From positions 124,001 to 188,000 of the IMG/VR virus record IMGVR_UViG_3300035670_000008: DNA of 64,000 nucleotides. One strand, 5' to 3'. Made by a program: the position numbers and the translations under genes. Below, one piece after another: positions 2,233 to 50,156 of the stretch. Below the pieces are notes generated by a model. The model was not told where the DNA came from, did no database searches, and saw nothing but the letters and a program-made list of their open reading frames with translations. The stretch's first letter is position 1. Every line of letters begins with the position of its first letter.

Positions 2233-5200
2233 CTAAGCTATACCTAGGAGTTGGGCGGTGGTCGGGGAGTTGGTGTCCTCCGAGATAATCTGGAAGAACT
2301 CCGCCGGAGACAGTGCGACGTTCGACCCGTCTACAAAGGCAGAGCGGATGTCTGACCGACCCGACATAGCTGTCAACGTTTCGCCGGAGTCTAGGTCTTC
2401 AGCGTCTAGTTCCTCCTCATCTCCTCCTACTAGATTCTGGGATAGATAGTTGTAGATGTTCTGGATGCCGGCGCTAACACTCTTAGCTACGTCCGCCATG
2501 AACTCGTCTTGTGTAACGGTCGTGGTAGGAATTGGTCGTTGGGAGATAACTCCCCCGACGGTCATCCCAATCAACCCGCCCGCTACCTCCGTTATTAAAC
2601 GAGCGGCGCCGGTCTGTCCCGCAACCCCAGGTACACCCGCGAAGCCGGGACGGGCTTGGTCGAAGTGCTGTCCAAGTAGCGTACCAAACGTAGCTCCGCC
2701 TGCGTAGATAAGTTCGCTAACCGCTGCTCTAGCCAGGCCCTCTGTTGGACTGCCGTAGTTCATTAGATACTGCTGCATCCGTCCGAACTGGAGTTTATCT
2801 GCGATTCTCTGGGTGCGGTCGGCAGATTGGGTGTCTTGAGATGGAGACAACAACTGGCGTAGGCTCGATCGCTCGTAGGAGCTAGCCGTAATACCAGACA
2901 TTACGACATCTAGACCTAAGCTAGTCACCTGCTCGGTAAGGGGTATGTCTCCCTGCATCATTGAGAACAACAACGGTACGCCAAGGATACTGACGCCTTC
3001 AGCTAGCCCGTGCATCCGGCTTAGGACTTCATGGCTCTCGGCGCGCTCTTTAGCCGCCCGCTGTACATCTACACTTCTTTGCGTAACGTCCATCAAATTA
3101 TCTCTCGCCTGAGTCACCTCAGCTAACGGACTAACAAAACCAGCAGCCTGTCGGTTCTCTAGATAGGTGTCTAGGTTCTCGTTAAGCTTCTGCTGCACCA
3201 CTTTCTGCTGCTCTACTAGCGCTTCTACCTGTTGTAGCTCCACTTCGCTAGTGTCGGCGGTTATCTGGCCAGTTTTCTCGGTGATAATCTGAGCCATGTT
3301 CTGAGCTAAGCCAGCCATTCCAACCTGGGTGTGGAGGTAGCTGTTGGCGGCTGCCGCGTACTCTAGGGCTCCCATCCCAGCAGTCACCGGTAATCGGTTC
3401 ACTTCTGGCACTGGAGCGGTCGGGCTTGCGGTCGGAGTTTCAACTCCCCCGTAGGTGAGGGCCTGCACTACCTTCTGTTGGAAGTCAATCATCTGGTCTG
3501 GGGTTAGGTTAGCGCCGGCTTCGGACATCATCTGTTGAACGCTGTCTGGTATGGCTCCACCTAACGCTAGAGCAGCGAATACTCCTTTTACTTCTTGATG
3601 GCTTAAACTACCGCCACCGGCAATCTGGCTCTTAACGGCGTCTACAATAGCAGTGACATTATGAGCGAAGGCTTTCGGCAGGGCCTCCCCAGATAACTTA
3701 CCTGCGTCGAGAGCGTATTGTTGGGCACTGAACTCCATAGCCAACGAATTGAAGCTATCGCCGTGTGCTACCAGGGCCTTAGCTAAATTAGTTGTACCCC
3801 CACTGTCTTGAATTTCTGCTACCGCTCGGTTGAACGCTTTGAGCCGGTTCATCATTGGCATCATCAAATCCGTCTGTTGGGAGATACTATGCTCCACCAA
3901 ACTACCGATGACGGCTTTGGTTAACGTCTGTTCACTTAGCTGAGCCCCAGGATTCTCAGGAGTTTGTACGGCTGTGAGTTCCTGTTGGATAGCTGCACTC
4001 ATCGCAGACTGCTGCTCTCGCAGTTTAGCTAGCTCCGTCTGCTGTCTGGCTTCTAGTCCGGCTACGATTTTGTCGGCGGTGTCTACGTTTAGATATTTAT
4101 CCCGTAGTAGCAGCGTGCCTTTACCTTTTATCCGAGCTACTTTCTGTTTAGTAGAGAGACGCTCATCATCTAAAGTATTCTGTATCTCATCTAGAAAGCG
4201 AACGGGCTCAGTTTCTGAATCACCTATCTTAACGTCTAGGTAACTCTGAACGTCTTTGATATAAGACTCCATGCTGGCCAACGTCAATTTACTATCATCG
4301 ACGATCTGACCCTGCTCGTTCACTCCATAGATGTCTAGAGCTTTCCGAGTCACGTCGATGTGGATGTTCTTCATCCCTTCCAACATCGCGTCGGAGATGA
4401 AGTTGGCTTGGAACTTATTCATCATATCCGACAGTACATAAGTCGTTAACTTAGCGTCGTCGATACGCCCGTAGGTAGCTACGCGGGCTTTGATGTGTTC
4501 TGGTAGTGTGCCATCGTCTAGGGCCTTCTGGTAGCTCGCTTTGATAGCTTTCAGCGTACTGCCATAGGAGCTGTTTTCCATGAGGTTAGCTGCGCTATCT
4601 CCTTTACCACTGACGTAATCAGTCAATAATCGCAGAGCGGCAAAGGCCGTTAATCCTTCCGTCTCCTGAACGGAAGGCCCTCTAGTGTCAACTCCATACT
4701 GGTATTGCAGGGCGCTGTTAGCTACCGTGCCTAAGAAGTCTTGACTAACGATTTGAATGAAGCTCTTGCGTTGGTCGTGGTCGGTATAGCGAGACTCCAT
4801 CTGGAGGATATTGGTGTAGCCAACTTCTTTAGAGATAGCTTCCCGGTCGGTGATTCCGATCTCTTTAAGTTCGTCTAGAGCAGACTCACTGATTCGATAG
4901 GACTCAATCCGGCCACTTAGACCGCCCGCCTGTTTCGGTTTCAAGGCGGCGTCCCGGAGATACTGTTGGGTGGTGACCAAGAACCGGTAGCTAACGGCGT
5001 TCCGTTCTTCTGTTTCCCGCATGGCGATTCGCCAGGGGATTATCTCTTCCGTCGTATTATCTACCGCTTCTTGAGTCAACATGGACTGCATTCTGGTTAA
5101 AGCATCTCCCACAGCTGCGTCTGCGTTCTGTTGGATGGCACCAGTAAAGCCCCTCTCAACGGCTGCGTTGAATCCAGCGGTTAGGTCTTTATCCAAAAGC

Positions 5201-8200
5201 ATTCGCTTGAAGCTGATGTCAGCCGATAGCCCACTGCTGATAGGTACGACAGTGTTGTACACCTTACCAAGTAGCGAGCCCCCGGTAATCCCCATGATGG
5301 CCTGCATCGAGCCGAAGTTCTCTGGGTCGGTTACAGTACCCCGCACGTTAGCGAACACCTTATTAACGCTCATCATCGACATTACCGTCGACTCCATCTG
5401 AGCTTGATATTCGGACACCGCCTGGACGTAGTCGTCTTTGGTGTAGCTACCTTTATCTAAGTAGGCTTGGTAGAAGGAGCCAGATTGCTCAAATTGACCA
5501 GACCAATACTCGAAGTTCTCCCGGACGCGGGTCTGCTTCTCGTTGGACAGTTTACCGAAGCCTTCATCCCAAGTTAAGGAGCCTTGTTGGAGCCTGCCGT
5601 CTGTGTCAAACTCAGCAGCATTAATATGAGAGTATTTACCTAACTCCCCGCCCATCAACCCAGTATCGAAGTTGAAGCCGGATAAGGTGTCTACGAACTG
5701 CTTGATTAAGCCGCGTAGCGCCTCGTCTTTAAAGACGGTGTTCTCCGCAATCTCCTTACTACCAATGACTTGTTCTGGCAGCGCTAAGAAGCTGCCGATG
5801 TAGCTACGCAACCCTTCGTAGGCTCGGTTTATCTTCGAGGTTCGGGTGGCTTCTACCTCGCCTAACGCTGCTTTAATCGTCTGCGTAGCGACGGATTTAA
5901 AGTTTTCTGCTTGTTGAATGGACGCAGCCTTCTCGGCCAGCTGCTCTTCTAAAGATTCAACCAAAGCAGGAACTGGGGTTGCCATATTTCTAGCTTTTAC
6001 TAGAGCAGCTTCTATCTGCTCTTTCTCTCTGGATAATCGGCGTAGCTCTACAGTCCGCTGAGCAATCTCCCCGGTCATGTTATTGACTCGGCTGAGGGCG
6101 GCTTGGAAGGAGTCCCCGTCGTAGTCTCCTAAACCAGTAAACTCAAAACCGAAGGCGCTGACTAACATCAAGGCAGAAGCCGAGGTCTCATTAGAGGTTA
6201 GGAAGGTGTTTAGCTCCCGACCCCGTCGGTTCGTTTCTGTAATCTCGATGGCTTGTTTAAAGAGGCTGTTGATTGACTGCCCATCGGTTGGGTTGCTGGT
6301 ATAGAACGGTGCCCCTTGACGGCCTGTTAGGACAGCCCCTAGCCCAGCTCGGTACTCAATCTCATTCTGGACTTTAGCTAGGTTCTCCTGGTTAACTGGT
6401 TGACCACTGATAACGGAGGCAACGATGATGTCGATGTTCTCGTTGTTAACCAGCCGACGGTGTAAGTCTTCCGGGGTGATGTTTGCACTTTCGTTTCCGT
6501 AGTGGTAAGCGTAATCTCTTAGTAGCTTTGCCCACTCACGTAGCTGACTGTTATACTTCGCCAGGTCGGGATAGTCTTGGTATATCTCAGCTTCTTGCTT
6601 CAACAGCCGAACGGTTTGTTGGTCTACTGAGTCAACGACAGCTCCAGTGCTGGGATTTATTATATCCTCGACGCCAGCATACAGCTGCCTAGAAGCTATT
6701 TCAGTTTCGTATTGATTTACTGTGTCTTGGCTTAGCGACCCCATGTAGGCATTGGCTTGGTCTAACCTTGCTTGTTCTACTGGGACATAACGAGCCGTTG
6801 GGTTATTAAGTTGCGCGGCTGCGCGTTCGATGGTTAACTTGCTCTGCTGGTACTCCAACAGATTCTCTGCTACAGTCTGACGGCCTTTAGCGGCTTCTTT
6901 GGTCAGTCCATAATCAATATTCAACCGGAAGTACTCGGGACCCCCGTAAGCAGTACGTTGGGATTCGACGTAACCAATAGCGGCTTCAACCTGGGCTAAG
7001 CGGCTTTGCAGCTCGGCTTGGTTACCTAACACTGATACACCTGATTGAAGTTCGTCGTATTGTCTTTGAGTTAGTTTGTTACTTAGTCCTGTACCTTGGA
7101 TGAAGGTTTCTTCCGCAGTGTAACCGCCAGCTAACCGCCGTTCCAAGTTGGCTTTGATTTCATTTAGCCGGTCAACGATAAAATCGATGTTCTTACCGTC
7201 TTCCTTACCGTAGGCAACTGCTCTAAGCCGGTTAGTGTAATCTATAACCTCCTGCATCTGAGCTAGGTTAGCTGCCTGCTGTTGTGGAGAGCTGGAGTCA
7301 TATTGTACATATCCCCAGCCGATGTACTTCTGCAGCTTTAATTCACTTTCGATAACGTTCTGATAAGCCTTGTGCTCTTCAGACAACCCAGCGTGGGCAG
7401 CCTGGCGAGCTGGTAATTCCGCAGACTTCTCAGCTATCTTCGTGTCTAACTTTCCAATTTCAGTTTTTATTGCGGCTAACTCACCTGGAAGCTTAGTAGT
7501 GTTATCGGCTTGATACCCTTCTAACTCAGTTACTTTATCTCTCATGCCTCCAATTTTTTGGGTGAGGTTCTCAACCTGCCCGGTGAGATACTGGGGCCAA
7601 CCGTCTTCGTTATAGAAGAATGAATTGTCTGGTATTGGCATCCCAACTGGAACGGCTTCAGGGCCTCTTAACCCTAGGTCAGCAACCATAATATTACTTC
7701 TGGCTCTAGCCTGTAGTTGATTTGCTCTTTTCAGCTTGGCATAGAGGCTGTCACCTTGTTCTATAGGGAACAAGACGCTAGCCGCCTTCTGCCTAGCTTT
7801 AACGCCGTCTATACTCTGAGCGTCAAGGTCAGCATCCCCGAACATAAGTGCGCCAAAGAAACCTCCAAATTCACCTCTAGATAAGTATGCAGCTCTTACC
7901 ATCGGAAAGCGGCTATCTCTAACGGTGTTTAGTTGCTGCTCACTTGGATTGAATAAGAAGTTGGTGTAACCTTTGATGTCTGATTGGGTCATTAGCCGCT
8001 CGGTCACGGCGTCTAACCGAGTTAATGCACCTACGTTTTCGGGGGTGACCGTTTGGTTTACACCTAGGTCAGCCAGCCCCGCATTGATATTAGTAAGGAT
8101 GTTGGGTAGTCTGGTGTTGTTTATCTCGTTATAGGCACCCTCTAACGTAGGTATCATATTGTCTACCGCGGCTAACAAACTCTGCCCCCGCGGAGTCAGT

Positions 8201-11200
8201 TGGTTTACAGCTATACGTCCGGTAGCTTGACTAGCTGGGACTACTTCAAAGAGTGCCCTGACGTTATCGTTTACCTGCGCAGCGAACTCTCTTTGTTCTT
8301 GTTGACTGAGTTGATTTAAGTCACTCGGCATATTGGAAGGTATAATACTTCCTTGGGCTACGCTGTTATACCTTGTTAGATGCTTCTCTAAAAACCGCAT
8401 TTGCCCGATAAAGTCCCGTGCGGAGTAGGGCGGCACTTCGTCGGTAAGTCCTATAGCATTTTCTATTGAAAAGACAATTTTATCGTGGTAGGTATCTCCA
8501 AACTGGTTTTGGTTGGTTAGCGTATTAATTTTACGACCTATAGCAGGCAGTACTCTGCTGTTAAGGTTCTGGTAGGTGCTGGCTTGGTTTAAGAGCCAAT
8601 TCCATTTATTATCTACGTTCCGTCTTGCCCGCTGAACTCTGGTGTTGTGTCCCTCTCCTGATTGGTCGTAGGGGTTTCTGATGTCGTAGTAGCGGTAATA
8701 GTTTAGGCTGGCTTGTTGTGTGCGGATATACGCTTCTTGCTCAGCAATTTTTTGCTGTTTATCGACGACTTGAGCTTCTTTCTTAGCGATAGCTGCATTT
8801 TTCTCGTTGATTCTCTGCTGCAGCTCCATCTGGTTTTTAACGTAGCCGCTTCTTGTGTTGTAGTGATAAGCTATCTGCTTACTTCTTTTAGCCTCTAACC
8901 GGCTGATTTCATCCTGTCTATTCTGCAGGGATTCGCCCGATACACCAAAGTTGAGCCGGTCACGCTGTTTAATAATGGTGTTCTCGCCTTTAATGTAGCC
9001 AAGGCTAACGTCTAGGTTTCTAATCCGCTGCTGGTTAACCTTCTGCTCTTCTATGAAGGCAAGCTGTGTTTTGACTGGGTTTTCTGTGCCTAAAGGTACT
9101 ACTCCACTTAGATAGGTGTTTCTTACTTCTACTAGACCCTTAGCTGAACGTAAAGCGTTCTCGATAGTATCTCTATCACCAGAGATTTGGGCTTGCCGTA
9201 GCTTTTGAATCACCGACTCGACTTCGTTCTTAACAGTGCCATCCGTCAGCTCTTGCAGTAGTTCTTGAGCGTATTCAATTTCGTTGGTAATCGTCAGTTC
9301 CATCAGAATCTGACCCTTACTTCCTAAAGCAGCAGCTAAGCGGATGGCTTTAACATCCTTCCTGATAGATTTATCGATGGACGAACTTAGCCGGCGGATA
9401 CCGTTTCCGGCAGTCAGCCCCGCTGCCCGCTCCACCCGGGAGCCCATTCCTACCTCGTCCATCCCGACCAGGAAGCTGTTGACGGCTATATAGGAGGTAC
9501 CGCTCATCCCCATCCGGTTGGCGGTGGCCTGGCGGATGCTGTTTTTGTTGTGTACGAGTTCTACCGCCGTCTCTTTCGACTGCTGCATTAATACCTGCAG
9601 TTCTTGGAGCTCTACAACCTCTTCGTCAGTAATTGTGGAGGTGCCGACACCTTGTAACGCTCCGAGTTGAATCTTATCAATCACGGGCTGTAAGCGTTGT
9701 AGCTTCGCTACTAATTTGAACTGAGCTTCCAATGCCGGGTGGGACTCAGCGTTAAATAGTAGGCTGAGCTTCTGTAGGATATCTAAACCAAGTAACACCC
9801 CTGTCTGAGCGTTACGGTCTGAGCCTACAGTAACTACGTTTAGCCCCCGGCCCTGAGTATCCAAACTATGACGGTCTAATATCTCAATACTTGGCAGGCT
9901 AATCATCCGCGTTGTGCTTAACGATTGCATAATCGTCTTAGCTGACTCGCGTTGTAGTCTCCCTTCAAAGTCGCCTTTATTCCGGTAGTACTCGAACTGC
10001 TGCTGTGCTGATTGGTATAGAGACTCCATACCTTCTAAATATTCCGCGCCAGTATTCATATTGAAGGTATTTTCCACTCGCGTTCTGACTTGCTCCCGGT
10101 AAGTCTCGGTTATGGCATTTAACGCTGCATTCGTAGCTAACGCGCGTGTCCCGGTAGCATTATAGTTTCTCAGATATTCTTTCTGGTAAAGAATATCCTC
10201 ACTATCCTGGTCGTATAGGTGGGTCGTGTTGAGACTGGTATTAATTGGAGACTCCTGCCGAGAATACAACCTATCTAGAAACTCCTCCATGTTAAACTCG
10301 GCTATTCCCAGTTTTGCTTCTTCTAACCGGGTCTCTAGTGCTGCCATAAACGTGGGGTTGTTGGCAGCTTTATGTCTGAACTTTCTGTCCAGCCGAGTTC
10401 TAGTTTCTTCGAGGACTAAGTCAACTCTGCGGTTGATATTAGCCTCGTAGTCTAGGTTATTACCCAGGTTACGGCGAGTGATGTCTGCATAGTCCATCAT
10501 CTGCTGCAGGGCAGGTAGATAGCTGTTACTGTCCTGCTTTTGGTGACCTTGTTTAATAAACTCACTAACGGCTTTAGTCCCTAACGTTCTAGTCTCTACC
10601 CTTCCTGATGAATCAACGTTGCCTGGTAGCTGATGCCGTCCGAAGCTTGTGTAGTGAGTTAGGTACGTATTGATAAAGTCGTAGGTAGTGTTCTGTCCAA
10701 GAGAGAGGCTTAATCCTAGGCGTTTAGTTGTGATATCTTCGTTAAACACCAACGCGGAGAGGTCTGAGTTAATAGCCCGATGCTCCGTAGCGTTAGTTAT
10801 TAGTTGCGGAGTCAACCCTAATTCTGTTTGAGCGATATGTTGCACAACAGCGGCATCCCCGAGGTTGTGCTTCATAATCCCGTAGCTGTCTTGGACTTGA
10901 CGGTGGGTAGGGACAACGTTCTCGTAGACGATGGCTAATTGAACCAAGGCATGTTGAATTGTACCGACGTCGGTCAAATCTTTCGGGTTATAAGCATACA
11001 TCTCTAGTTGCTTAGCAGTTAAGCCTTGGGCATAGTGTCCTTCTAACGCAGTGATATTCTTCATCCCCGCAGGCACTGCGAGTTTACTCGGCTCATACTC
11101 GCCAGGTAATTCAATAAACCGCTGGGTCTGAACGTAGGTGCGGATAGCTTGGTAGACCGCTTCCACCTCATGGAGCATCTGCTCTTCTTCAGAGGTGATA

Positions 11201-14200
11201 GTTTGGTTCTGCTTCAGTTTATTCAGAACGCCTTTGACTTTGTCGGCGTCTGGAAGGGTATATCTAAAGCGGCGGGCAACCTCTTCAATCCCAACGCTTA
11301 GTTTCTCCCCAAGGTGACCAAACTTACCGTATAGCTCCAGGGCTGTGTAGGTGGCGAGCTTCGTCTTCTCACCGTATTTCAATAGCCGCTTTTCACCATC
11401 TTCGCCTTTATCGTCTTTACCGTAAGCCGTCAGCAGGTCTTGAAGCTGCTGGTCAGCGTTACTAACTCCAGAGTCAGTCAGATTCCGTTTTATATCGGTC
11501 TTGAGCGCTTCTATCTGCTTCTCTTGTTGGCTACGAACATCGGCTAACTTACCGCTTACTGACGCGGCTATCAGCTGTATCGTAGCTTCGTCTGCATTGG
11601 CTAAGAAGCTTTGACTGGATGACTGGCCTGCCAGCTCATCTAGAGTCCGTCGGACGATACTGTGGTCTTCGCCGACCGCAGTCAAGTCGTCAGGACTAAT
11701 ATTGAATAACCCAATGCTTTGTGATTGAGCTGCTAGTCGGCTAATCTGCTCGTTTGTTCTTTGTTCGGCTGGGGTGTTTAAGGCATCTTGTAGTGTACGT
11801 AGGTAGTCAGCTACACTTTCAGGGCCTTGACGAGCTAACCGCTCGTTATGTTCGGTCAGGTCAGTTCCCGCTAATTTGTGTAGCTCTCGGATGAGCTCAG
11901 TTGTTTCGTGCCGGCGTAAGGTGGCGCCTAGGTTGGCTTTATAATCCCCAGACCCTCTAATTGTTTCGTGCAGTTTCTTCAGATACCCATCGGCGTCTGC
12001 ATCTAGTTCAGCATTGAACATACTCCGGGAGTCCAAGCTAACCTCAGAGAAGCCCATTGCATTCAGCCGGTCTTGAACGTCTACGTTGCGGTAGATGTCC
12101 TGGGACGCCTTTAATAAGAAGGCCAACAGCCCGGCTGGGCGAGTCGTAAAGTCATCTAAGTGGGTGTAGATGTCTTTGCCATGCTCTTGTCCAGTCTTTA
12201 GGCTCTTGGCTTCGGTGAACAACGTATCGAATAACTGTTGGGTACCAGACTGTAACTTATTCAAAGCATCATCATCGCCTGTTAAGGCGGAGATAACTTG
12301 CTGGGTTAACGCGCTCTCTAAAGTCTCACCTTCTCCAACACCGCCCACTAAAGCAGCTAAGCCAGAGTAGAAGCTTAAAGAAGACTTCAACTTGCTGTCG
12401 TTTGCTTTACTTTTTACTGGGCGTAACCGCAACGCCTCCGCGTACTGAGAGCGATTCTCTGCGTCGTGGGTCGTTAGGCTGGTGCGGAGGGCCTCTTTAA
12501 GCCCCTCAATGTTGGTTGAATCGTCGAAGGTCATTAGTAGCATTGCTAATGCTTCCGCGATGGCTCTACCTCCTTTAACCTTGGAATCCCCTTTACCTGT
12601 AATTAGCTCGTAGATACCGCTTTGCTGTTGCTCTTCTAGCAGGCCTAACCCCATATCGAAGTTGAAGCCCTTGATTTGACTAGTAGATAGCATCGCAAAG
12701 ACGTCTTGCGCGGCTACGCGGGTGGGTAAGAGGTGCTTCGTACCTTCAGTAAAGCCGGCCAAGGCTTCCCATAAGGCCCCCTCGGCTGTCCGCATAGGCC
12801 CTTTAGACATCGTGGTACCTGGACGCATGGCGTCTCGGTCGGCTTTAATCGTCTGGGTGTTGAGGTCTAAGGTTACGGTATTCCGTCGACTAACGTTAAC
12901 TCTGGAGTCTGACACAACGGTAATCCCTTCACCGAGTTCACGACCCGCCATAGCCGGCAGCCGGAACAGCATCGGTCGTACCTGGCTGTCTCCTGTCGAA
13001 CTGCTGTAGTTAAATAGGTTCTTAATGGTGAACGCCATGGAGTTCTCTTTGACTTCACCAATTTTCTCCATAGAGGCTAGGTATTGAGCTGGCTCCAGCT
13101 GGACGTCCTTTCCGTCTGAATCTTTCTGTACGTCGGGCGGGCTATAAACCCCTTTGCGGTAGTAAAAGCCTACTTCATCCGAGCCACGGGAGATATCTAT
13201 GCGAAGGTTATCGCTGTTCAACGACTGGATAGAGTCTATAACCAGTCGATGGACGTCTCTGGCGTCAAGACTGTCACCTACAGCGAGCCGAACGCTCTCT
13301 ATAAAGTTGCCAATATTAAGCTTACCTTTGGGGTCAGCTAAGCCTACTGGGGTTACACCCAGCTCAGCTAGTCGGCTGGTCACCTCAGTCGTCACCTGTT
13401 TATTCAGGCTATTTAGAACATCGGTTAGTTCGACTTTAAGGTCTTTAGCTAAAAAGATAGTCCCTGGCTTTAGTTTGTCGTTGATTTCTTTCTGTAGGGC
13501 AGCCGGGTTAGCTGAGAAGGAGTCTAACGTAGCTGTGGCCTGGACAACGTGGGGTTGAACATATCTCAGGTCATTGTACTTAGAGTTTAAGAGACCGTAG
13601 TCAGATAACTGAGACGCCCCGGTACCGATGACTACCCTTCTGGGGGTCTTACCGCCGATGAAGCCTTTGATAATCTGCTTCTGGTCTTCACTCAACTCTA
13701 CAGCCACCCGTCGCAGCAGTTGGGGGTCGGGGTTTCTTAACAGGTCAGCGTCTTCGGCAGTGTTATCTGGATGGAGCCGCTTAAATTCTCTTAGATATTC
13801 ATCCTTTAAATAATCGAACTGCTGTCGGCTTAGACTACCAAGAATACTGCCGCCTAAAGACGATGGTGCGTCTCCCGCGTTGTAGCTACCAACACTCCCG
13901 AAACTCAAGGCGTATTGAACGAATTCCTTTGAGGCCTCGTAGATAGGTCGAGTGGAGGTTAGGTTCTTCATCCGTTGGCTGATTTGCTCAGACTTAGCAA
14001 ACGGGAAGAAATATAACAGCTGGTCTAGGTTACCTTCCTCGTCTAACTGACCGTTTGGAATAGCATTACCTTGCTCGTCGTACTTAGGTAAAAGCCTACC
14101 ATCGTAACTAGTCTGGTAGTCTCGCTCGTAACGACTGAAGGTTATCTTAGCTAACCGTTCTGCTTCTGCTTTAGCCTCGTCTTTGTTTCGTCCGGCCTGT

Positions 14201-17200
14201 TCCAGAAGAGCGGTCGTCTCCTTGATATACTCACTCTTTTTAATAATGCTGAGCCCGGGCATACTCTGCATCAAACCCATTAGGTTGTGAACGACCGGAG
14301 CCCCGCCCTCTAGTTTCAACAGCCCGCCGTAGCGAACGTAGGCGTCTTGGAACTTAAGTCTACCGGACGAAGCAACGGCTCGGAGGTACTCGCCTGAGTA
14401 GGCCCCCAGGCCTTCCCCGTGCATTAACGCGTAGGGGCTCATAACAAAACCGGTAGTCTCTCCACCTCGGAGGTAGTCAAAGACGTTCGCAATCTGCTTG
14501 TCTTCGCCGTATACCGGCAGGCGGTGGATACCTTGACCAAAGGAGTAGTTCGTTTCGTGGGGTTGAGGGAAGATGTCTACTTGGTTGCTAAACGCCTCTT
14601 TCTTCCCTTTCTCTACCTCGTTTTTATAGATAGCCGCCAACACCGGATTGGAGTTGATGGTCTGCATAATCAAATCATTATAAATACCGCTATAACCTAA
14701 GCCGCCTTGGGTGCGTAGCCCCATACTGACGGATTCAATCACCCGGTCGGTAATGGTAGAGGTGAACTTAGCTACCTGTTGATGAATGGCTTCACCGCTG
14801 GTAGAGCTACCCACCATCGACATTAATCCCTCAACAAAGACGTCAACCGCCTTAGTCATCTGCTCTCTTCTCAAGCCGGCTAACGCTTCAGTCTTGGAGT
14901 AACCAGGGACGTATTGGTCGTAGTCTGCTAAAGCCCCACCTAACATATCGGTTAGTTGAGTTTTAAACGCTACCTTAGCCTTTATCCGGTCTTTAGCCGA
15001 GCTGCCGGCTAGCTGCTCGATTAAGCCCTTGGAGACATTCTCTAAGTCGATGTTCTCTTTATTTTTATTCAGACTGTAGCCTAACCCTTTGCCAATCTCG
15101 GCGAAGTTAGCTCCGATCAGTTTCCGTAGGTTGGTCTGAAAGACTCCTTTGTCTAAGTTACCGAAAGTAGTGTGAACACCACGAATTTGGTACTCATACT
15201 GCATGGAGTGATACATCGTGGTCACTAAACCACCTAAGACATCGAATGCCCCGGCTTGGTAGCTATCTCCGTGGCGGAGAGTCTTATCTACGACTTTGCC
15301 TTCTCTAGGGTCATAGACTTGATAGGTCTTGGCGTCGCCAGAACTATTCTTATAGACCATGCCGGCTAGCATCCGCTGAGTCTTGTTTAGATAGACGACA
15401 GGCTCCATGCCGTCCTTATAACGGGAGTTGATGGTCTGCTCTCCCCCGAAGGTTACGTCAAAGGAGTAACCTGGCTGCCCCTGAATCGGACTAGCAATCT
15501 GGATTGTCGCCCCGACTAACTTAGCCTCTCCTTCACCAACGAGATACCGGCGGCTAAAGATAAACTTGGGCATCTTACTGGGGTCGGTGCTTTCCCAAAC
15601 GCGGGCTTCCTTCCCGCCCATCTGCTGCAGATAGGCCAGGCCCTGCTCAGCGATTGCCGAGTTTCCTCGTCGTTCGACTAACAAGCCTTGATAGTCCTTC
15701 CCGCCCCTTAGATTTAACCCAAAGCGGCTGTAGCCATGTAGGTAGGTATTGGCAATATCGTCCTGCTCCTCCGTAGAGAGAAGGTCTAAAGAGTTCGCAC
15801 TGGTTTTATCTAAGAACAACATCGTCTCAATGTTGTTTTCGTAGGCCTGCTTTGATAGGTTAGCCGACCCAATCCCATAAGACTTTAGTTTATTATTCTC
15901 ATCCAAGACAGCAAACGACTTACTGTGCATGAACTGAGACGGCATCAGTGTAAAAGCGTTGTTCTCTAGTAGGGTTTTAATTAGTCCGTGTCGTTCCTTC
16001 TGATTCTCGGTTCTAGAACTCTCAGCTATTTTGTCGACTGCGTAATAGTTGTCTAATAAGGCAAACAACCCTAGGTCTGGCTTATAACTTGTAGCTGTGA
16101 TTCCAATACTTAATCGTCCGCTTTCCGCTAAGGTCTTCAAAGCCTCGAAGCCGGACGCCTTAACGCTAAAAGGCGTGCCCGACATATTTTTATTAGGGTC
16201 TAACATCTGTTCAATGTATTGAACAGACATAATAGCTTTGTCCTTTCCGTCAGCTGCGGCTCGGCCTAGACGGTCAGACATCTGTTCGTGGATGTCTTCG
16301 TTAACGTATAGAGCTTTGTGACCAGCGCCAGTAGCCACAAGGTTGTTTTCGTATAACGTTTTAAACCGGTCCCTTAGATTGTTAGGATCTCGGTCTCCAG
16401 TATCGTGCTTATTATCTTGTAGACTTAATAACGCATCGGTGGCTGCTTTAATCTGTTTGCTAACCGCGTCGAACGAAGCACGTTGTTTAACAGCCCATTG
16501 GTTGTGCTCTTCGTCATCTAATTTGAATGCTGCTCGATTGATAACCAGCATTTCTTCAATGGTGGTGCTTTGGTCTAAAGCTGGTGTGTAGTTTTGGGTG
16601 GAGATGAAGAACTTAGTAATCTGCTCTTGTTGACCCTGACCTTCATAGAAATAACCAAGCTTGGCGTGGATAGACCCGGTGTTCATATACACTGGTTTTA
16701 TCCGGGCGTCGGCTTGTCCGTTGTATAGCTGTGAAGCTCGTACAGCTAAGTCGTTACCTCCGTAGATACTGGCACGGGTAAAGTCGTCCTGGGCATCTGA
16801 CGCGGCTGAATACCCTTGTGTCCCTATCACCGTTGCACCAGGACGAGTAACTAAGGCAGCCAGCGCGCTAGTGTTCTGCATCTGGTAGACGTAGCCACGA
16901 AAACCTAGATTTCTGTTTTCCTCACCTGCGAACATGGCGAAGATATCTAAGTTACTTGGTCTACCAACTAACCCACTCGGACTCTGGTAATGCCGGGTTT
17001 GTTGAGTCAGCCGGTTACTGATGTTATCTATCGAACGGTTGAGCCGCTGAGCGCCATACTCTACTGCGCGAGTCAGCCCCTGGTTGAGATAACCTTGGTC
17101 GTACTCCGCTATCTTAAGTCGGTTAGCGGTGGTGTCTACATTCTGTTTCTGGTCAGCACTAACCTTATTTCGCTCGTCTTCTGCTTGTTTAAAGCGGCGC

Positions 17201-17571
17201 TCAAACTCCTTAGAGTAATTCTGAATACCTCGGAATGGATCGGTAGCATTAGTGACGAAGTTCGTCCAGAACTTATGGTCAACGTTGACTTCACCGTCAG
17301 TGTTTGCGTTCAGTGACCAACTGCTTAGGTTGGTGGCTACCTCTGGGTAGATTGCAACGTAGTCTTCAAGCGGGATTGATTTTAATAACTCTTTAGGCAG
17401 GCTTTCCCCTGCGTCTTTCAACGCCTGCTCTAAGAGGTTAATAAAAGACTGATATGTTGTAAGTAATGTCTCGTCCGCTACTAGGGACTGCTTTACCGGA
17501 CCGTTTACCCTGGCATCCTCGCTTAGGTAGGTAATTAAGTCATAGTAGTTTTGAATAGAGTAAGTAGACAT
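2233..17571 (-). CDS. Giant virion protein (5112 aa): N-terminal PLD-family domain, two-barrel RNA polymerase, and a helical/hydrophobic tape-measure-like C-terminus
   Basis: Single uninterrupted ORF. PLD motifs HAK (H302) and HSK...GSAN (H549). RNAP motifs LSDYGLL (D1324), K1576/K1590, RMGMSGTSYI (R2686), VLTGRQGAP (R3751), GDYDGD (3815-3820) and LLGKVYN (4102-4106). It lies downstream of the tail-assembly-chaperone genes and upstream of gpU-like and baseplate genes. Confidence 0.8.
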   Translation of the reverse strand: MSTYSIQNYYDLITYLSEDARVNGPVKQSLVADETLLTTYQSFINLLEQALKDAGESLPKELLKSIPLEDYVAIYPEVATNLSSWSLNANTDGEVNVDHKFWTNFVTNATDPFRGIQNYSKEFERRFKQAEDERNKVSADQKQNVDTTANRLKIAEYDQGYLNQGLTRAVEYGAQRLNRSIDNISNRLTQQTRHYQSPSGLVGRPSNLDIFAMFAGEENRNLGFRGYVYQMQNTSALAALVTRPGATVIGTQGYSAASDAQDDFTRASIYGGNDLAVRASQLYNGQADARIKPVYMNTGSIHAKLGYFYEGQGQQEQITKFFISTQNYTPALDQSTTIEEMLVINRAAFKLDDEEHNQWAVKQRASFDAVSKQIKAATDALLSLQDNKHDTGDRDPNNLRDRFKTLYENNLVATGAGHKALYVNEDIHEQMSDRLGRAAADGKDKAIMSVQYIEQMLDPNKNMSGTPFSVKASGFEALKTLAESGRLSIGITATSYKPDLGLFALLDNYYAVDKIAESSRTENQKERHGLIKTLLENNAFTLMPSQFMHSKSFAVLDENNKLKSYGIGSANLSKQAYENNIETMLFLDKTSANSLDLLSTEEQDDIANTYLHGYSRFGLNLRGGKDYQGLLVERRGNSAIAEQGLAYLQQMGGKEARVWESTDPSKMPKFIFSRRYLVGEGEAKLVGATIQIASPIQGQPGYSFDVTFGGEQTINSRYKDGMEPVVYLNKTQRMLAGMVYKNSSGDAKTYQVYDPREGKVVDKTLRHGDSYQAGAFDVLGGLVTTMYHSMQYEYQIRGVHTTFGNLDKGVFQTNLRKLIGANFAEIGKGLGYSLNKNKENIDLENVSKGLIEQLAGSSAKDRIKAKVAFKTQLTDMLGGALADYDQYVPGYSKTEALAGLRREQMTKAVDVFVEGLMSMVGSSTSGEAIHQQVAKFTSTITDRVIESVSMGLRTQGGLGYSGIYNDLIMQTINSNPVLAAIYKNEVEKGKKEAFSNQVDIFPQPHETNYSFGQGIHRLPVYGEDKQIANVFDYLRGGETTGFVMSPYALMHGEGLGAYSGEYLRAVASSGRLKFQDAYVRYGGLLKLEGGAPVVHNLMGLMQSMPGLSIIKKSEYIKETTALLEQAGRNKDEAKAEAERLAKITFSRYERDYQTSYDGRLLPKYDEQGNAIPNGQLDEEGNLDQLLYFFPFAKSEQISQRMKNLTSTRPIYEASKEFVQYALSFGSVGSYNAGDAPSSLGGSILGSLSRQQFDYLKDEYLREFKRLHPDNTAEDADLLRNPDPQLLRRVAVELSEDQKQIIKGFIGGKTPRRVVIGTGASQLSDYGLLNSKYNDLRYVQPHVVQATATLDSFSANPAALQKEINDKLKPGTIFLAKDLKVELTDVLNSLNKQVTTEVTSRLAELGVTPVGLADPKGKLNIGNFIESVRLAVGDSLDARDVHRLVIDSIQSLNSDNLRIDISRGSDEVGFYYRKGVYSPPDVQKDSDGKDVQLEPAQYLASMEKIGEVKENSMAFTIKNLFNYSSSTGDSQVRPMLFRLPAMAGRELGEGITVVSDSRVNVSRRNTVTLDLNTQTIKADRDAMRPGTTMSKGPMRTAEGALWEALAGFTEGTKHLLPTRVAAQDVFAMLSTSQIKGFNFDMGLGLLEEQQQSGIYELITGKGDSKVKGGRAIAEALAMLLMTFDDSTNIEGLKEALRTSLTTHDAENRSQYAEALRLRPVKSKANDSKLKSSLSFYSGLAALVGGVGEGETLESALTQQVISALTGDDDALNKLQSGTQQLFDTLFTEAKSLKTGQEHGKDIYTHLDDFTTRPAGLLAFLLKASQDIYRNVDVQDRLNAMGFSEVSLDSRSMFNAELDADADGYLKKLHETIRGSGDYKANLGATLRRHETTELIRELHKLAGTDLTEHNERLARQGPESVADYLRTLQDALNTPAEQRTNEQISRLAAQSQSIGLFNISPDDLTAVGEDHSIVRRTLDELAGQSSSQSFLANADEATIQLIAASVSGKLADVRSQQEKQIEALKTDIKRNLTDSGVSNADQQLQDLLTAYGKDDKGEDGEKRLLKYGEKTKLATYTALELYGKFGHLGEKLSVGIEEVARRFRYTLPDADKVKGVLNKLKQNQTITSEEEQMLHEVEAVYQAIRTYVQTQRFIELPGEYEPSKLAVPAGMKNITALEGHYAQGLTAKQLEMYAYNPKDLTDVGTIQHALVQLAIVYENVVPTHRQVQDSYGIMKHNLGDAAVVQHIAQTELGLTPQLITNATEHRAINSDLSALVFNEDITTKRLGLSLSLGQNTTYDFINTYLTHYTSFGRHQLPGNVDSSGRVETRTLGTKAVSEFIKQGHQKQDSNSYLPALQQMMDYADITRRNLGNNLDYEANINRRVDLVLEETRTRLDRKFRHKAANNPTFMAALETRLEEAKLGIAEFNMEEFLDRLYSRQESPINTSLNTTHLYDQDSEDILYQKEYLRNYNATGTRALATNAALNAITETYREQVRTRVENTFNMNTGAEYLEGMESLYQSAQQQFEYYRNKGDFEGRLQRESAKTIMQSLSTTRMISLPSIEILDRHSLDTQGRGLNVVTVGSDRNAQTGVLLGLDILQKLSLLFNAESHPALEAQFKLVAKLQRLQPVIDKIQLGALQGVGTSTITDEEVVELQELQVLMQQSKETAVELVHNKNSIRQATANRMGMSGTSYIAVNSFLVGMDEVGMGSRVERAAGLTAGNGIRRLSSSIDKSIRKDVKAIRLAAALGSKGQILMELTITNEIEYAQELLQELTDGTVKNEVESVIQKLRQAQISGDRDTIENALRSAKGLVEVRNTYLSGVVPLGTENPVKTQLAFIEEQKVNQQRIRNLDVSLGYIKGENTIIKQRDRLNFGVSGESLQNRQDEISRLEAKRSKQIAYHYNTRSGYVKNQMELQQRINEKNAAIAKKEAQVVDKQQKIAEQEAYIRTQQASLNYYRYYDIRNPYDQSGEGHNTRVQRARRNVDNKWNWLLNQASTYQNLNSRVLPAIGRKINTLTNQNQFGDTYHDKIVFSIENAIGLTDEVPPYSARDFIGQMRFLEKHLTRYNSVAQGSIIPSNMPSDLNQLSQQEQREFAAQVNDNVRALFEVVPASQATGRIAVNQLTPRGQSLLAAVDNMIPTLEGAYNEINNTRLPNILTNINAGLADLGVNQTVTPENVGALTRLDAVTERLMTQSDIKGYTNFLFNPSEQQLNTVRDSRFPMVRAAYLSRGEFGGFFGALMFGDADLDAQSIDGVKARQKAASVLFPIEQGDSLYAKLKRANQLQARARSNIMVADLGLRGPEAVPVGMPIPDNSFFYNEDGWPQYLTGQVENLTQKIGGMRDKVTELEGYQADNTTKLPGELAAIKTEIGKLDTKIAEKSAELPARQAAHAGLSEEHKAYQNVIESELKLQKYIGWGYVQYDSSSPQQQAANLAQMQEVIDYTNRLRAVAYGKEDGKNIDFIVDRLNEIKANLERRLAGGYTAEETFIQGTGLSNKLTQRQYDELQSGVSVLGNQAELQSRLAQVEAAIGYVESQRTAYGGPEYFRLNIDYGLTKEAAKGRQTVAENLLEYQQSKLTIERAAAQLNNPTARYVPVEQARLDQANAYMGSLSQDTVNQYETEIASRQLYAGVEDIINPSTGAVVDSVDQQTVRLLKQEAEIYQDYPDLAKYNSQLREWAKLLRDYAYHYGNESANITPEDLHRRLVNNENIDIIVASVISGQPVNQENLAKVQNEIEYRAGLGAVLTGRQGAPFYTSNPTDGQSINSLFKQAIEITETNRRGRELNTFLTSNETSASALMLVSAFGFEFTGLGDYDGDSFQAALSRVNNMTGEIAQRTVELRRLSREKEQIEAALVKARNMATPVPALVESLEEQLAEKAASIQQAENFKSVATQTIKAALGEVEATRTSKINRAYEGLRSYIGSFLALPEQVIGSKEIAENTVFKDEALRGLIKQFVDTLSGFNFDTGLMGGELGKYSHINAAEFDTDGRLQQGSLTWDEGFGKLSNEKQTRVRENFEYWSGQFEQSGSFYQAYLDKGSYTKDDYVQAVSEYQAQMESTVMSMMSVNKVFANVRGTVTDPENFGSMQAIMGITGGSLLGKVYNTVVPISSGLSADISFKRMLLDKDLTAGFNAAVERGFTGAIQQNADAAVGDALTRMQSMLTQEAVDNTTEEIIPWRIAMRETEERNAVSYRFLVTTQQYLRDAALKPKQAGGLSGRIESYRISESALDELKEIGITDREAISKEVGYTNILQMESRYTDHDQRKSFIQIVSQDFLGTVANSALQYQYGVDTRGPSVQETEGLTAFAALRLLTDYVSGKGDSAANLMENSSYGSTLKAIKASYQKALDDGTLPEHIKARVATYGRIDDAKLTTYVLSDMMNKFQANFISDAMLEGMKNIHIDVTRKALDIYGVNEQGQIVDDSKLTLASMESYIKDVQSYLDVKIGDSETEPVRFLDEIQNTLDDERLSTKQKVARIKGKGTLLLRDKYLNVDTADKIVAGLEARQQTELAKLREQQSAMSAAIQQELTAVQTPENPGAQLSEQTLTKAVIGSLVEHSISQQTDLMMPMMNRLKAFNRAVAEIQDSGGTTNLAKALVAHGDSFNSLAMEFSAQQYALDAGKLSGEALPKAFAHNVTAIVDAVKSQIAGGGSLSHQEVKGVFAALALGGAIPDSVQQMMSEAGANLTPDQMIDFQQKVVQALTYGGVETPTASPTAPVPEVNRLPVTAGMGALEYAAAANSYLHTQVGMAGLAQNMAQIITEKTGQITADTSEVELQQVEALVEQQKVVQQKLNENLDTYLENRQAAGFVSPLAEVTQARDNLMDVTQRSVDVQRAAKERAESHEVLSRMHGLAEGVSILGVPLLFSMMQGDIPLTEQVTSLGLDVVMSGITASSYERSSLRQLLSPSQDTQSADRTQRIADKLQFGRMQQYLMNYGSPTEGLARAAVSELIYAGGATFGTLLGQHFDQARPGFAGVPGVAGQTGAARLITEVAGGLIGMTVGGVISQRPIPTTTVTQDEFMADVAKSVSAGIQNIYNYLSQNLVGGDEEELDAEDLDSGETLTAMSGRSDIRSAFVDGSNVALSPAEFFQIISEDTNSPTTAQLLGIA
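4933..13644 (-). other. Two-barrel (double-psi beta-barrel) RNA polymerase region within the 5112-aa protein
   Basis: Beta-like then beta'-like motifs occur in the expected order. The catalytic DxDGD motif is encoded at 6112-6126. Boundaries are approximate. Confidence 0.75.
15800..16950 (-). other. PLD-superfamily domain (two HxK half-sites) within the 5112-aa protein
   Basis: IHAKLGYFY...FFISTQNYT (His at 16666-16668) and FMHSKSFAVLD...YGIGSANLSKQAYENNIETML (His at 15925-15927). Domain boundaries are approximate. Confidence 0.8.
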
Positions 17572-50100: not shown

Positions 50101-50156
50101 CTTTAGTCCACTTAGGAAGTAACGAATGGTTATTGGCGGGAGACCTTAAAGCGTAG
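47136..50156 (+). CDS. Collagen-like tail fibre protein (1006 aa)
   Basis: Multiple Gly-X-Y runs ([12 protein letters not shown]) separate repeated globular modules. The C-terminal domain ends ...[16 protein letters not shown]. Confidence 0.85.
47958..48038 (+). repeat. Tandem 18-bp repeat ggtatacaaggtgagcag (GIQGEQ) in the fibre gene
   Basis: Four 18-bp units (the last ends CAA) and one 9-bp half unit. A related ggtatccaaggggagcag pair lies near 47310-47345. Confidence 0.9.

What the first reader, a model, noticed from the sequence alone, without database searches (positions are those of the whole stretch)
6337..9444. About 1000-aa coiled-coil insertion splits the catalytic beta'-like barrel
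Seen: RMGMSGTSYI (aa 2686) and VLTGRQGAP (aa 3751) are about 1065 residues apart. The intervening sequence is dominated by heptad-like helices (e.g. QMELQQRINEKNAAIAKKEAQVVDKQQKIAEQE; LAAIKTEIGKLDTKIAEKSAEL), and another coiled coil follows GDYDGD directly. Known: in E. coli beta' the equivalent motifs are about 80 residues apart. Inference: long helical segments have been inserted in loops of the polymerase core. They could be the actual ruler or channel part, or an auto-inhibitory element that keeps the enzyme unfolded in the virion until ejection or proteolysis.
Basis: partly seen in the sequence, partly recalled or inferred. Interest (0 to 1): 0.6.

Follow-up and report, generated by a model that had tools for sequence, protein, structure and literature searches.

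The report
Giant helical insert in phage polymerase barrel
A 5,112-residue jumbo-phage protein that looks like a virion RNA polymerase carries a fast-evolving, all-helical insertion of about 1,030 residues in the middle of its catalytic barrel, which may be the largest such insertion yet seen.

Summary
In the 5,112-aa ORF (window 2233-17571, minus strand) the motifs RMGMSGTSYI (aa 2686) and VLTGRQGAP (aa 3747) lie about 1,060 residues apart. The equivalent E. coli beta' motifs are 78 apart.

The two flanks are the best-conserved blocks of a family of about 75 giant (3,000-5,400 aa), cysteine-free phage proteins with an invariant GDxDGD. The segment between the flanks is 95-155 aa in most members. 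It has expanded to 357-1,236 aa, apparently at least twice independently.

AlphaFold places two strands before the insertion and four after it. In a short-insert homologue this barrel matches the RNA polymerase largest subunits from the first motif through DxDGD, but only weakly (Z about 8; Foldseek E at least 0.015; profile comparison not significant).

The insertion is predicted 74% helical with no strands. Only about a quarter lies in very long helices, so "coiled coil" overstates it. Its middle 485 aa are unalignable even to a relative that is 51% identical in the core.

Best reading: an expanded, rapidly evolving surface module at the known insert site of the beta'-like barrel of a probable ejected virion RNA polymerase. 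The ruler and auto-inhibitor ideas are unsupported.

The parts
2233..17571 (-). Giant ORF, 5112 aa (P0001), with no cysteine. Member of a family of ~75 giant phage proteins.
9427..9609 (-). Conserved N-flank block (aa 2655-2715): a helix plus barrel strands 1-2. Contains RMGMSGTSYI (aa 2686-2695, window 9487-9516). Family signature: R..GD(R/Q)L...G.S.I...SFL....E...G.R.
   Evidence: AF2 strands at model residues 37-45 and 52-55, pLDDT 83-91. Counterpart of beta' RVDYSGRSVI in the hhalign top alignment, not significant.
6340..9426 (-). The insertion, aa 2716-3744 (1029 aa). Predicted all-alpha, poorly conserved, variable in length across the family.
9103..9321 (-). Predicted three-helix bundle at the start of the insertion (aa ~2751-2823). 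Lies in the part still alignable to P0002 and P0003.
   Evidence: (generic bundle matches, Z ~10)
8677..8937 (-). 87-residue predicted helix (aa 2879-2965). The best coiled-coil candidate.
7426..8883 (-). Hypervariable middle of the insertion (aa ~2897-3382). No BLAST-detectable similarity even to P0002.
7315..7488 (-). 58-residue predicted helix (aa 3362-3419). Contains LAAIKTEIGKLDTKIAEKSAEL. With the preceding helix it forms an antiparallel hairpin.
6082..6339 (-). Conserved C-flank block (aa 3745-3830): barrel strands 3-6, with R-Q-G-A-P (aa 3751-3755) and the invariant G-D-Y-D-G-D (aa 3815-3820, window 6112-6129).
   Evidence: AF2 strands at model residues 1093-1097, 1117-1122, 1147-1151 and 1168-1172, pLDDT 85-93.
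5869..6111 (-). Coiled-coil helical hairpin directly after DYDGD (aa ~3821-3901).
5242..5304 (-). The most widely conserved motif of the family, QAIxGxxGxxLLGKxYNTxxP (aa 4090-4110), in a long predicted helix. Role not assigned.
   Evidence: (70 family members)
4933..4968 (-). Bridge-helix-like motif QQYLRDAALKPK (aa 4202-4213). Resembles beta' GLADTALKTA. In the homologue model it lies in a 37-residue helix.
   Evidence: The resemblance is by eye only.
12796..12825 (-). Candidate basic motif of the second (beta-like) barrel, R-P-G-x4-K-G-P (aa 1583-1592).
   Evidence: block found in 55 family members. Fold not modelled.
15853..15927 (-). N-terminal phospholipase-D-type HKD motif, HSKSFAVLD...GSANLS (aa 549-573).
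   Evidence: Pfam PLDc_2 E=4e-5, below the cut-off. Motif conserved in 42 family members. P0006 carries precomputed PF13091.

Best explanation
The 5112-aa protein is most likely a giant single-chain 'two-barrel' RNA polymerase. It is encoded in the head-morphogenesis module, and it is probably packed in the capsid and ejected into the host. It also has an N-terminal HKD (phospholipase-D-like) domain and a hydrophobic C-terminal segment.

Its beta'-like catalytic barrel is intact but interrupted. Strands 1-2 (aa ~2690-2710) and strands 3-6 (aa ~3747-3827, ending at the metal-binding GDYDGD) are separated by a 1029-residue all-alpha insertion. The insertion sits in the loop where cellular beta'/Rpb1 subunits and jumbo-phage polymerases carry their own lineage-specific insert domain.

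The ancestral state in this family is a helical insert of about 100 residues. In the window's lineage it has grown roughly ten-fold by accretion of helical bundles and a few very long helices.

I infer that it works as a peripheral, solvent-exposed arm, serving as an interaction, packing or spacer module beside the active-centre barrel. It is neither part of catalysis nor a tail ruler. It evolves under relaxed or host-driven diversifying selection.

Shown: the anatomy, the length variation, the conservation pattern and the predicted all-helical nature. Inferred: the polymerase identity, virion packaging and the surface-module role.
For: Conservation and length:
- (1) The flanks are the best-conserved blocks and the insertion the worst.
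- (2) The distance between flanks is 95-155 aa in most of the family, but 357-1236 aa in the window's clade and 606-956 aa in a separate clade. A midpoint-rooted tree therefore suggests at least 2 expansions.
- (3) G-D-x-D-G-D, R-x-G-A-P and the G..G of the first strands are invariant or nearly so in 42-44 aligned members.

Structure:
- (4) AF2 of the window's own segment gives confident flanks (pLDDT 83-93) with a 2+4 strand pattern and a purely helical insertion.
- (5) AF2 of the short-insert homologue P0006 (pLDDT 73.7) gives the same pattern.
- (6) The top 50 Foldseek PDB hits of that model are almost all RNA polymerase largest subunits.
- (7) VIA-align matches model residues 199-525 to Rpb1 345-661 (Z 8.4, rmsd 3.9 over 139 aa) and to A190 476-654 (Z 8.4, rmsd 2.1 over 84 aa, 17% identity).
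- (8) Three of the ten nearest ESM Atlas family sets are phage proteins with Pfam RNA_pol_Rpb1_2.

Rate of change:
- (9) Only the first ~180 and last ~360 aa of the insertion align to P0002 and P0003, at ~30% identity, against 51-72% in the flanks.

Context:
- (10) The gene neighbours portal, protease and major capsid genes here, in the distant homologue P0007 and in Microcystis phage Ma-LMM01 gp080.
- (11) The whole family lacks cysteine, as expected for a protein threaded through a tail channel.
- (12) No other RNA polymerase was found in the genome.

Literature:
- (13) An insert domain at this site of beta' barrels is known (PMC7824862).
- (14) Lineage-specific insertions in DPBB-A, and the lack of sequence similarity between two-barrel families beyond DxDxD, are reported (PMC10770324).
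Against: - No significant sequence link to any polymerase: Pfam and PHROGs empty, PDB phmmer/hmmsearch empty apart from coiled coils, and hhalign against beta' colinear but with P = 0.06.
- Foldseek E-values are all at least 0.015. Z ~8 ties with generic helical matches and sits at the tool's own caution level.
- The second barrel, bridge helix and trigger loop are not structurally confirmed.
- Barrel closure in the window's own protein could not be read from coordinates. The two-chain complementation test gave no answer.
- Presence in the virion is not demonstrated.
- The Ma-LMM01 transcriptome study attributed all expression classes to host sigma-70-like promoters (PMC5780444).
- Much of the insertion model has pLDDT below 50, so its fold is uncertain.
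- No direct evidence exists for any function of the insertion.
Confidence: 0.6

Rival explanations
1. Auto-inhibitory or folding-control element. The large helical insertion keeps the barrel open or blocked inside the capsid and during ejection. Activity appears only after refolding or proteolytic removal in the cell.
For: N4 virion RNA polymerase is a beads-on-a-string protein thought to unfold and refold on ejection. A ~110-kDa, mostly helical C-terminal domain of unknown fold auto-inhibits it (PMC13434306). The insertion here is of similar size and is also all-alpha without a known fold. A head maturation protease is encoded nearby. The family is cysteine-free.
Against: Most family members have only ~100 aa at this site, so the mechanism cannot be general. 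The middle of the insertion is not conserved even between close relatives, which is unlike a surface that must dock on a conserved active site. No cleavage sites or contacts are known.
Confidence: 0.15
2. Ruler or trans-envelope channel part. The long helices form an extended rod that measures the tail, or spans the cell envelope as part of the ejection conduit.
For: P23-45 fuses a two-barrel virion RNA polymerase to its 5002-aa tape measure (PMC10770324). The insertion contains helices of 87 and 58 residues. The protein is cysteine-free with a hydrophobic C-terminal segment at aa 4992-5010. T7 and N4 ejection proteins are slender helical proteins.
Against: The gene lies beside the portal and capsid genes, not in the tail module, in three distant relatives. 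The phage has a separate sheath, baseplate and fibre module. Long helices are only about a quarter of the insertion and the rest is predicted as short-helix bundles. The length varies ten-fold within a family of otherwise colinear proteins. A ruler embedded inside a catalytic barrel would have to coexist with a folded enzyme.
Confidence: 0.07
3. Not a polymerase. The GDxDGD region is a structural or otherwise non-polymerase barrel of a giant internal head or ejection protein, and the 'insertion' is simply a variable helical linker between two conserved structural blocks.
For: No significant sequence or profile match to any RNA polymerase. The structural matches are weak. Ma-LMM01 gene expression was explained without a phage polymerase.
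Against: The acidic triad is invariant, in the right strand context, across ~60 very divergent members. Three independent structure searches are all enriched for RNA polymerase largest subunits. The motifs are colinear with beta'. Published two-barrel families also lack sequence similarity beyond DxDxD.
Confidence: 0.15

Closest known systems
Insert domain of the beta'/Rpb1 catalytic double-psi barrel: a helical bundle in bacteria, a RAGNYA domain in archaea and eukaryotes, and unique inserts in phiKZ-type phage polymerases (Iyer et al. 2021, PMC7824862)
   Same: Same topological site, between the strand pair carrying the RVDYSGRSVI-like motif and the NRAPTLHR-like strand, just upstream of DxDGD. 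The basal ~100-aa insert of this family is also helical.
   Different: About 1030 aa here (up to 1236 in P0003) against about 70 aa in E. coli. There is no detectable similarity to any known insert. It is hypervariable and has apparently expanded repeatedly.
Single-chain two-barrel virion RNA polymerases: crAss-like phi14:2 gp66 and P23-45 gp96 (PMC10770324; bioRxiv 10.1101/2020.03.07.982082)
   Same: A giant virion-module protein with a DxDGD motif and no other recognisable similarity to RNA polymerases. A role in early transcription after ejection is proposed.
   Different: The host phage is a contractile-tailed jumbo phage. The protein has an N-terminal HKD domain and a barrel split by ~1000 aa, and the whole family lacks cysteine. 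It is not fused to a tape measure. No sequence match to those proteins was obtained, and activity is untested.
Bacteriophage N4 gp50 virion RNA polymerase (PMC13434306)
   Same: A giant ejected polymerase with loosely connected domains. It includes a ~110-kDa, mostly helical domain of unknown fold that regulates activity.
   Different: N4 gp50 is a T7-like single-subunit enzyme and no such domain is found here. Its helical domain is C-terminal, not inserted in the catalytic fold.
Microcystis phage Ma-LMM01 gp080 (YP_851094.1, 3562 aa, annotated hypothetical) and homologues in MaMV-DC, MaMV-DH01 and Microcoleus phage My-WqHQDG
   Same: Members of the same giant-protein family: DFDGD, the LGKTYNT and RDAIKPK motifs, essentially no cysteine, and a gene next to the capsid genes.
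   Different: About 1550 aa shorter. The N-flank block is too diverged to measure the insert with my profiles. The match to the window's protein is only indirect, through the family profile and a distant member.

Membership tests
Two-barrel (double-psi beta-barrel) RNA polymerases | Metal-binding DxDxD (DxDGD) signature at the end of a strand of the beta'-like barrel | tested here: met
   GDYDGD at aa 3815-3820. G-D-x-D-G-D is invariant in 42-44 aligned family members.
Two-barrel (double-psi beta-barrel) RNA polymerases | Six-stranded beta'-like barrel fold around that motif | tested here: met
   AF2 gives a 2+4 strand pattern in both models. The best PDB and Atlas matches are RNA polymerase largest subunits, aligned from the first motif strand through DxDGD. 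Caveat: the scores are weak (Foldseek E at least 0.015, Z ~8, TM at most 0.35).
Two-barrel (double-psi beta-barrel) RNA polymerases | Statistically significant sequence or profile homology to a known RNA polymerase family | tested here: not met
   Pfam, PHROGs and PDB sequence searches were empty. hhalign against E. coli beta' and an 80-sequence beta' alignment was colinear but with P 0.06-0.27. The literature says this is usual between two-barrel families.
Two-barrel (double-psi beta-barrel) RNA polymerases | Second (beta-like) barrel supplying two conserved basic residues | tested here: inconclusive
   Candidate R...KGP motif at aa 1583-1592, in a block found in 55 members.
Two-barrel (double-psi beta-barrel) RNA polymerases | Bridge helix and trigger loop downstream of the catalytic barrel | tested here: inconclusive
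   QQYLRDAALKPK (aa 4202-4213) resembles the beta' bridge-helix core and lies in a 37-residue helix in the homologue model. It is not covered by any structural alignment.
Two-barrel (double-psi beta-barrel) RNA polymerases | Template-dependent RNA synthesis | not testable with these tools
   Needs biochemistry.
Virion-packaged, ejected phage RNA polymerases | Protein present in the purified virion and delivered to the cell | not testable with these tools
   Indirect evidence only: head-module position conserved in three relatives and a cysteine-free family. No virion proteome of a relative was found.
Lineage-specific insert domains of the beta' barrel | Located between the first strand pair and the NRxPxxH-like strand of the barrel, and variable between lineages | tested here: met
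   Site described in PMC7824862.
Tail tape measure proteins | Encoded in the tail module, between the tube or chaperone genes and the baseplate genes | tested here: not met
   The gene is divergent from the portal gene, upstream of the protease and capsid genes. Sheath, baseplate wedge and fibre genes lie 11-33 kb away on the other strand.
Canonical coiled coil | Continuous heptad periodicity over most of the segment, with few Pro or Gly | tested here: not met
   A crude heptad scan flags 14% of the insertion, the same as the rest of the protein. Pro is 3.0% and Gly 6.5%. Only four helices of 40 or more residues are predicted. Parts of it, aa 2879-2965 and 3362-3419, do qualify as candidates.
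Inteins or mobile insertions | Hint or homing-endonuclease domains, or a discrete presence/absence pattern | tested here: not met
   No Pfam domain in aa 2640-3800. The lengths form a continuum from 95 to 1236 aa. There is no second copy of the DNA in the genome.

The most novel reading that the evidence does not exclude
This may be the largest insertion known inside the catalytic fold of any RNA polymerase. It lies in a previously unrecognised family of giant, completely cysteine-free, HKD-domain-bearing virion RNA polymerases of contractile-tailed phages, including the bloom-controlling Microcystis phage Ma-LMM01. On this reading the hypervariable helical arm is a functional, host-facing or regulatory module. 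Examples would be gating of activity after ejection, or binding of host or phage partners at the RNA-exit side of the barrel. It would not be neutral filler.
Probability: 0.25. Interest if true: 0.8.

Novelty: new variant of a known kind. Interest (0 to 1): 0.62.

Why it matters
If the polymerase assignment is right, three things follow.
- A double-psi barrel active site can tolerate a ~113-kDa domain in one of its loops. That bears on how RNA polymerases acquire lineage-specific modules.
- It would define a new family of single-chain virion RNA polymerases in contractile-tailed phages.
- It would offer a candidate enzyme for the unexplained temporal control of the compact early-gene cluster of Microcystis phage Ma-LMM01, whose authors assumed host sigma-70 transcription throughout (PMC5780444).

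The complete lack of cysteine in about 270,000 residues of family sequence is a clean signature. It could help to recognise ejected phage proteins in general.

Tried and rejected
- Pfam and PHROGs scans of four overlapping pieces of the protein gave nothing for the core or the insertion. There were only weak coiled-coil-type hits (ATG16, SF1-HH) and a sub-threshold PLDc_2.
- phmmer of aa 3700-4400 and aa 2300-2800 against PDB gave nothing relevant.
- A family profile against PDB hit only keratin and tropomyosin, at the post-DYDGD segment.
- megablast and tblastn of the window's own sequences against 50,697 phage records gave no match. The same was true for P0028.
- The first representative search failed because the profile exceeded 1200 positions. 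It was re-run with the C-terminal block.
- hhalign of the family against E. coli beta' alone, and against an alignment of 79 proteobacterial beta' fragments, was colinear but not significant.
- ESM Atlas feature search with the insertion gave no usable hit.
- VIA-align wide searches with both models, and Foldseek with the insertion model, gave only generic helical bundles and hairpins at Z 8-10. That is below the tool's bar for helical folds, so no fold assignment was made for the insertion.
- Complex prediction with the N flank and C flank as separate chains, a surrogate for 'delete the insertion and see whether the barrel closes', returned 'no answer'. It is not used as evidence either way.
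- A diversity-generating retroelement as the source of the hypervariability was rejected, because the genome holds no template-like second copy of the insertion DNA.
- An intein or mobile element was rejected (see the membership table).
- Pfam searches of the whole genome for Rpb1_2, Rpb2_6, RdRP and T7-type RNA_pol found none. The T7-type search has no positive control.
A natural short-insert homologue was used instead.

Full report
**What is there.** The window is part of a 216,563-bp viral record judged 96% complete. The finding lies inside a single 5,112-codon ORF on the minus strand, window 2233-17571.

- The gene is divergent from a portal gene.
- Beyond the portal lie a head-maturation protease, the major capsid protein, a very large tail sheath, a baseplate wedge, a collagen-like fibre and the large terminase.
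- The phage is therefore a contractile-tailed jumbo phage, and the giant gene belongs to its head module.
One small correction: VLTGRQGAP starts at aa 3747.
- The E. coli comparison is right. RVDYSGRSVI and NRAPTLHR are 78 residues apart in beta'.

**The insertion is real by comparison with relatives.** A word-based search found seven giant homologues of 4,027-5,312 aa. A profile search of 1.84 billion representative proteins found 75 family members, nearly all 3,000-5,400 aa, and no ordinary polymerases.

- In a full-length alignment, the blocks around aa 2651-2700 and 3801-3850 are the best conserved in the protein. Residues 2720-3740 are the worst conserved, with low occupancy.
- The spacer between the two blocks, measured with block profiles, is 95-155 aa in most members. 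It is 357-1,236 aa in the window's clade and 606-956 aa in a separate clade.
- On a midpoint-rooted tree of the conserved core, this pattern suggests at least two independent expansions from a ~100-aa ground state.
- Between the window's protein and P0002, only the first ~180 and last ~360 residues of the insertion align, at about 30% identity. The flanks are 51-72% identical.
- The central ~485 residues (aa ~2897-3382) find no partner in any family member.
- The genome holds no second copy of the insertion DNA, so a diversity-generating retroelement is not the cause.
- No intein-type domain is present, and the length distribution is continuous.

**Does it split a barrel?**

- AlphaFold2 on the window's own aa 2655-3850, with 44 aligned sequences, gives confident flanks (pLDDT 83-93). 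It predicts a long strand and a short strand at aa ~2691-2709. It then predicts only helices up to aa 3744, then four strands from VLTGR to just after DYDGD.
- A natural short-insert homologue (P0006 aa 2385-3389, mean pLDDT 73.7) shows the same two-plus-four strand pattern around a ~100-residue helical insert.
- The top 50 Foldseek hits of that model in the PDB are almost all largest subunits of RNA polymerases: bacterial beta', Rpb1, A190 and the AR9 phage beta'. All have E of at least 0.015.
- A second look with VIA-align matches model residues 199-525 to Rpb1 345-661 (Z 8.4, rmsd 3.9 over 139 aa). It also matches A190 476-654 (Z 8.4, rmsd 2.1 over 84 aa, 17% identity). Both alignments start at the first-motif strand and run through DxDGD.
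- In the ESM Atlas shape search, three of the ten nearest family sets are phage proteins carrying Pfam RNA_pol_Rpb1_2, at low TM.
That condition is not met.
- I could not inspect coordinates. The two-chain complementation run gave no answer. Barrel closure in the window's own protein is therefore inferred, not shown.

**Is it a polymerase?**

*In favour:*
- G-D-x-D-G-D is invariant, R-x-G-A-P is nearly invariant, and two glycines of the first strands are invariant, across 42-44 very divergent members.
- The motifs are colinear with beta' in profile alignments: first motif with RVDYSGRSVI, RQGAP with NRAPTL, DYDGD with DFDGD.
- A bridge-helix-like QQYLRDAALKPK and a candidate R...KGP motif for the second barrel are conserved.
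- No other RNA polymerase is found in the genome.

*Against:*
- Nothing reaches statistical significance at the sequence level.
- The structural scores sit at the level the tools themselves flag as ambiguous.

The literature states that two-barrel polymerase families typically share nothing recognisable beyond the DxDxD region (PMC10770324). That fits the picture but does not prove it. I put the polymerase identity at roughly 0.8. I put active virion polymerase function at roughly 0.55-0.65.

**What the insertion looks like.**

- By DSSP on the model it is about 74% helical, with no strand of three or more residues.
- These long helices are only about a quarter of the insertion.
- A crude heptad scan flags 14% of the insertion against 15% of the rest of the protein.
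- Composition is unremarkable, with 3.0% Pro and 6.5% Gly.
- About a third of the model has pLDDT below 50.
- Structure searches return only generic three-helix bundles and antiparallel helical hairpins at Z 8-10.
- 'All-alpha insertion with some coiled-coil-like arms' is accurate. 'Coiled-coil insertion' overstates it.
- The coiled coil immediately after DYDGD is confirmed and is a family feature.

[quoted passage not shown] In bacteria that insert is a small helical bundle, as is the basal insert of this family. From my own knowledge, this insert corresponds to the 'dock' region beside the RNA exit path. I did not test that here.

I therefore read the 1,029 residues as an extreme elaboration of a permissive surface insert. 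It would be a peripheral arm that leaves the barrel intact. It evolves fast because it is either weakly constrained or engaged in host- or partner-specific contacts.

- **Ruler idea.** This is disfavoured by the gene's conserved position beside the portal and capsid genes in the window, in the distant homologue P0007 and in Ma-LMM01. It is also disfavoured by the separate tail module.
- **Auto-inhibition idea.** There is a precedent in the helical C-terminal domain of N4 gp50 (PMC13434306). However, most family members have only ~100 aa here, so it cannot be a general requirement.

**Wider context.** The family has cultured members. A distant member matches Microcystis phages Ma-LMM01, MaMV-DC, MaMV-DH01 and others, and a Microcoleus phage. 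Ma-LMM01 gp080 is 3,562 aa, annotated hypothetical and next to the capsid genes. It carries DFDGD and the other family motifs.

I found no paper linking it to two-barrel polymerases. The Ma-LMM01 transcriptome paper assumed host sigma-70 transcription for all classes, and it left the temporal control of a compact early-gene cluster unexplained (PMC5780444).

The whole family is cysteine-free. Of 77 proteins totalling about 270,000 residues, 75 have none, against about 1% cysteine in the other long ORFs of the genome. This fits proteins that are threaded through a tail channel.

**Limits.**
- No read-mapping tools were used.
- No altered or chimeric sequence was folded.
- No step needed referral.

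Noticed in passing
window 2233-17571 (-), and family proteins P0001-P0077: The giant protein has no cysteine in 5,112 residues. 75 of 77 family proteins (~270,000 residues in total) have none, and the two others are short fragments with one each. Other ORFs of at least 150 aa in the genome average ~1% Cys. Ma-LMM01 gp080 has a single Cys, at residue 21, possibly upstream of the true start.
   Followed up: partly
window 54373-63999 (+), continuing to genome 199204; also genome 103066-115785 (-): The genome encodes three giant ORFs of 4,239, 5,112 and 6,943 aa, together about 23% of its length. The 6,943-aa ORF lies downstream of the terminase, has no Pfam hit in its first 3,209 aa and is also cysteine-free. 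The 4,239-aa ORF has 57 Cys.
   Followed up: partly
window 15853-15927 (-), aa 549-573 of the giant protein: A phospholipase-D-type HKD motif (HSKSFAVLD...GSANLS), conserved in 42 family members. Pfam PLDc_2 scores E=4e-5, just under the cut-off. This suggests a nuclease or phosphodiesterase domain at the N-terminus of the putative polymerase.
   Followed up: partly
window 2542-2598 (-), aa 4992-5010: The only strongly hydrophobic 19-residue stretch of the protein (LITEVAGGLIGMTVGGVIS) lies near the C-terminus, in a Gly/Ala-rich region. It may be a membrane-inserting segment.
   Followed up: no
locus L084 (Microcystis phage Ma-LMM01, NC_008562.1 57700-68388): gp080, annotated as hypothetical, is a 3,562-aa member of this family, with DFDGD at aa 2537. 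It could be a virion RNA polymerase, relevant to the unexplained control of the phage's early-gene cluster gp054-gp063.
   Followed up: partly
window 28822-32409 (+): The tail sheath homologue is unusually long at 1,195 aa. Only its C-terminal ~460 aa match sheath profiles.
   Followed up: no
window 47136-50156 (+): A 1,006-aa tail-fibre-like protein with several collagen triple-helix repeat stretches (Pfam Collagen, E=6.5e-36).
   Followed up: no
window 51896-53677 (+): The large terminase subunit homologue is encoded downstream of the fibre genes and just upstream of the 6,943-aa ORF, far from the portal gene.
   Followed up: no
window 5242-5304 (-), aa 4090-4110: The most widely conserved motif of the family (QAIxGxxGxxLLGKxYNTxxP, 70 members) has no assigned role. 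It resembles both the beta' GERYNKV region and, out of order, the trigger-loop IGEPGTQLTMRTFH motif.
   Followed up: partly
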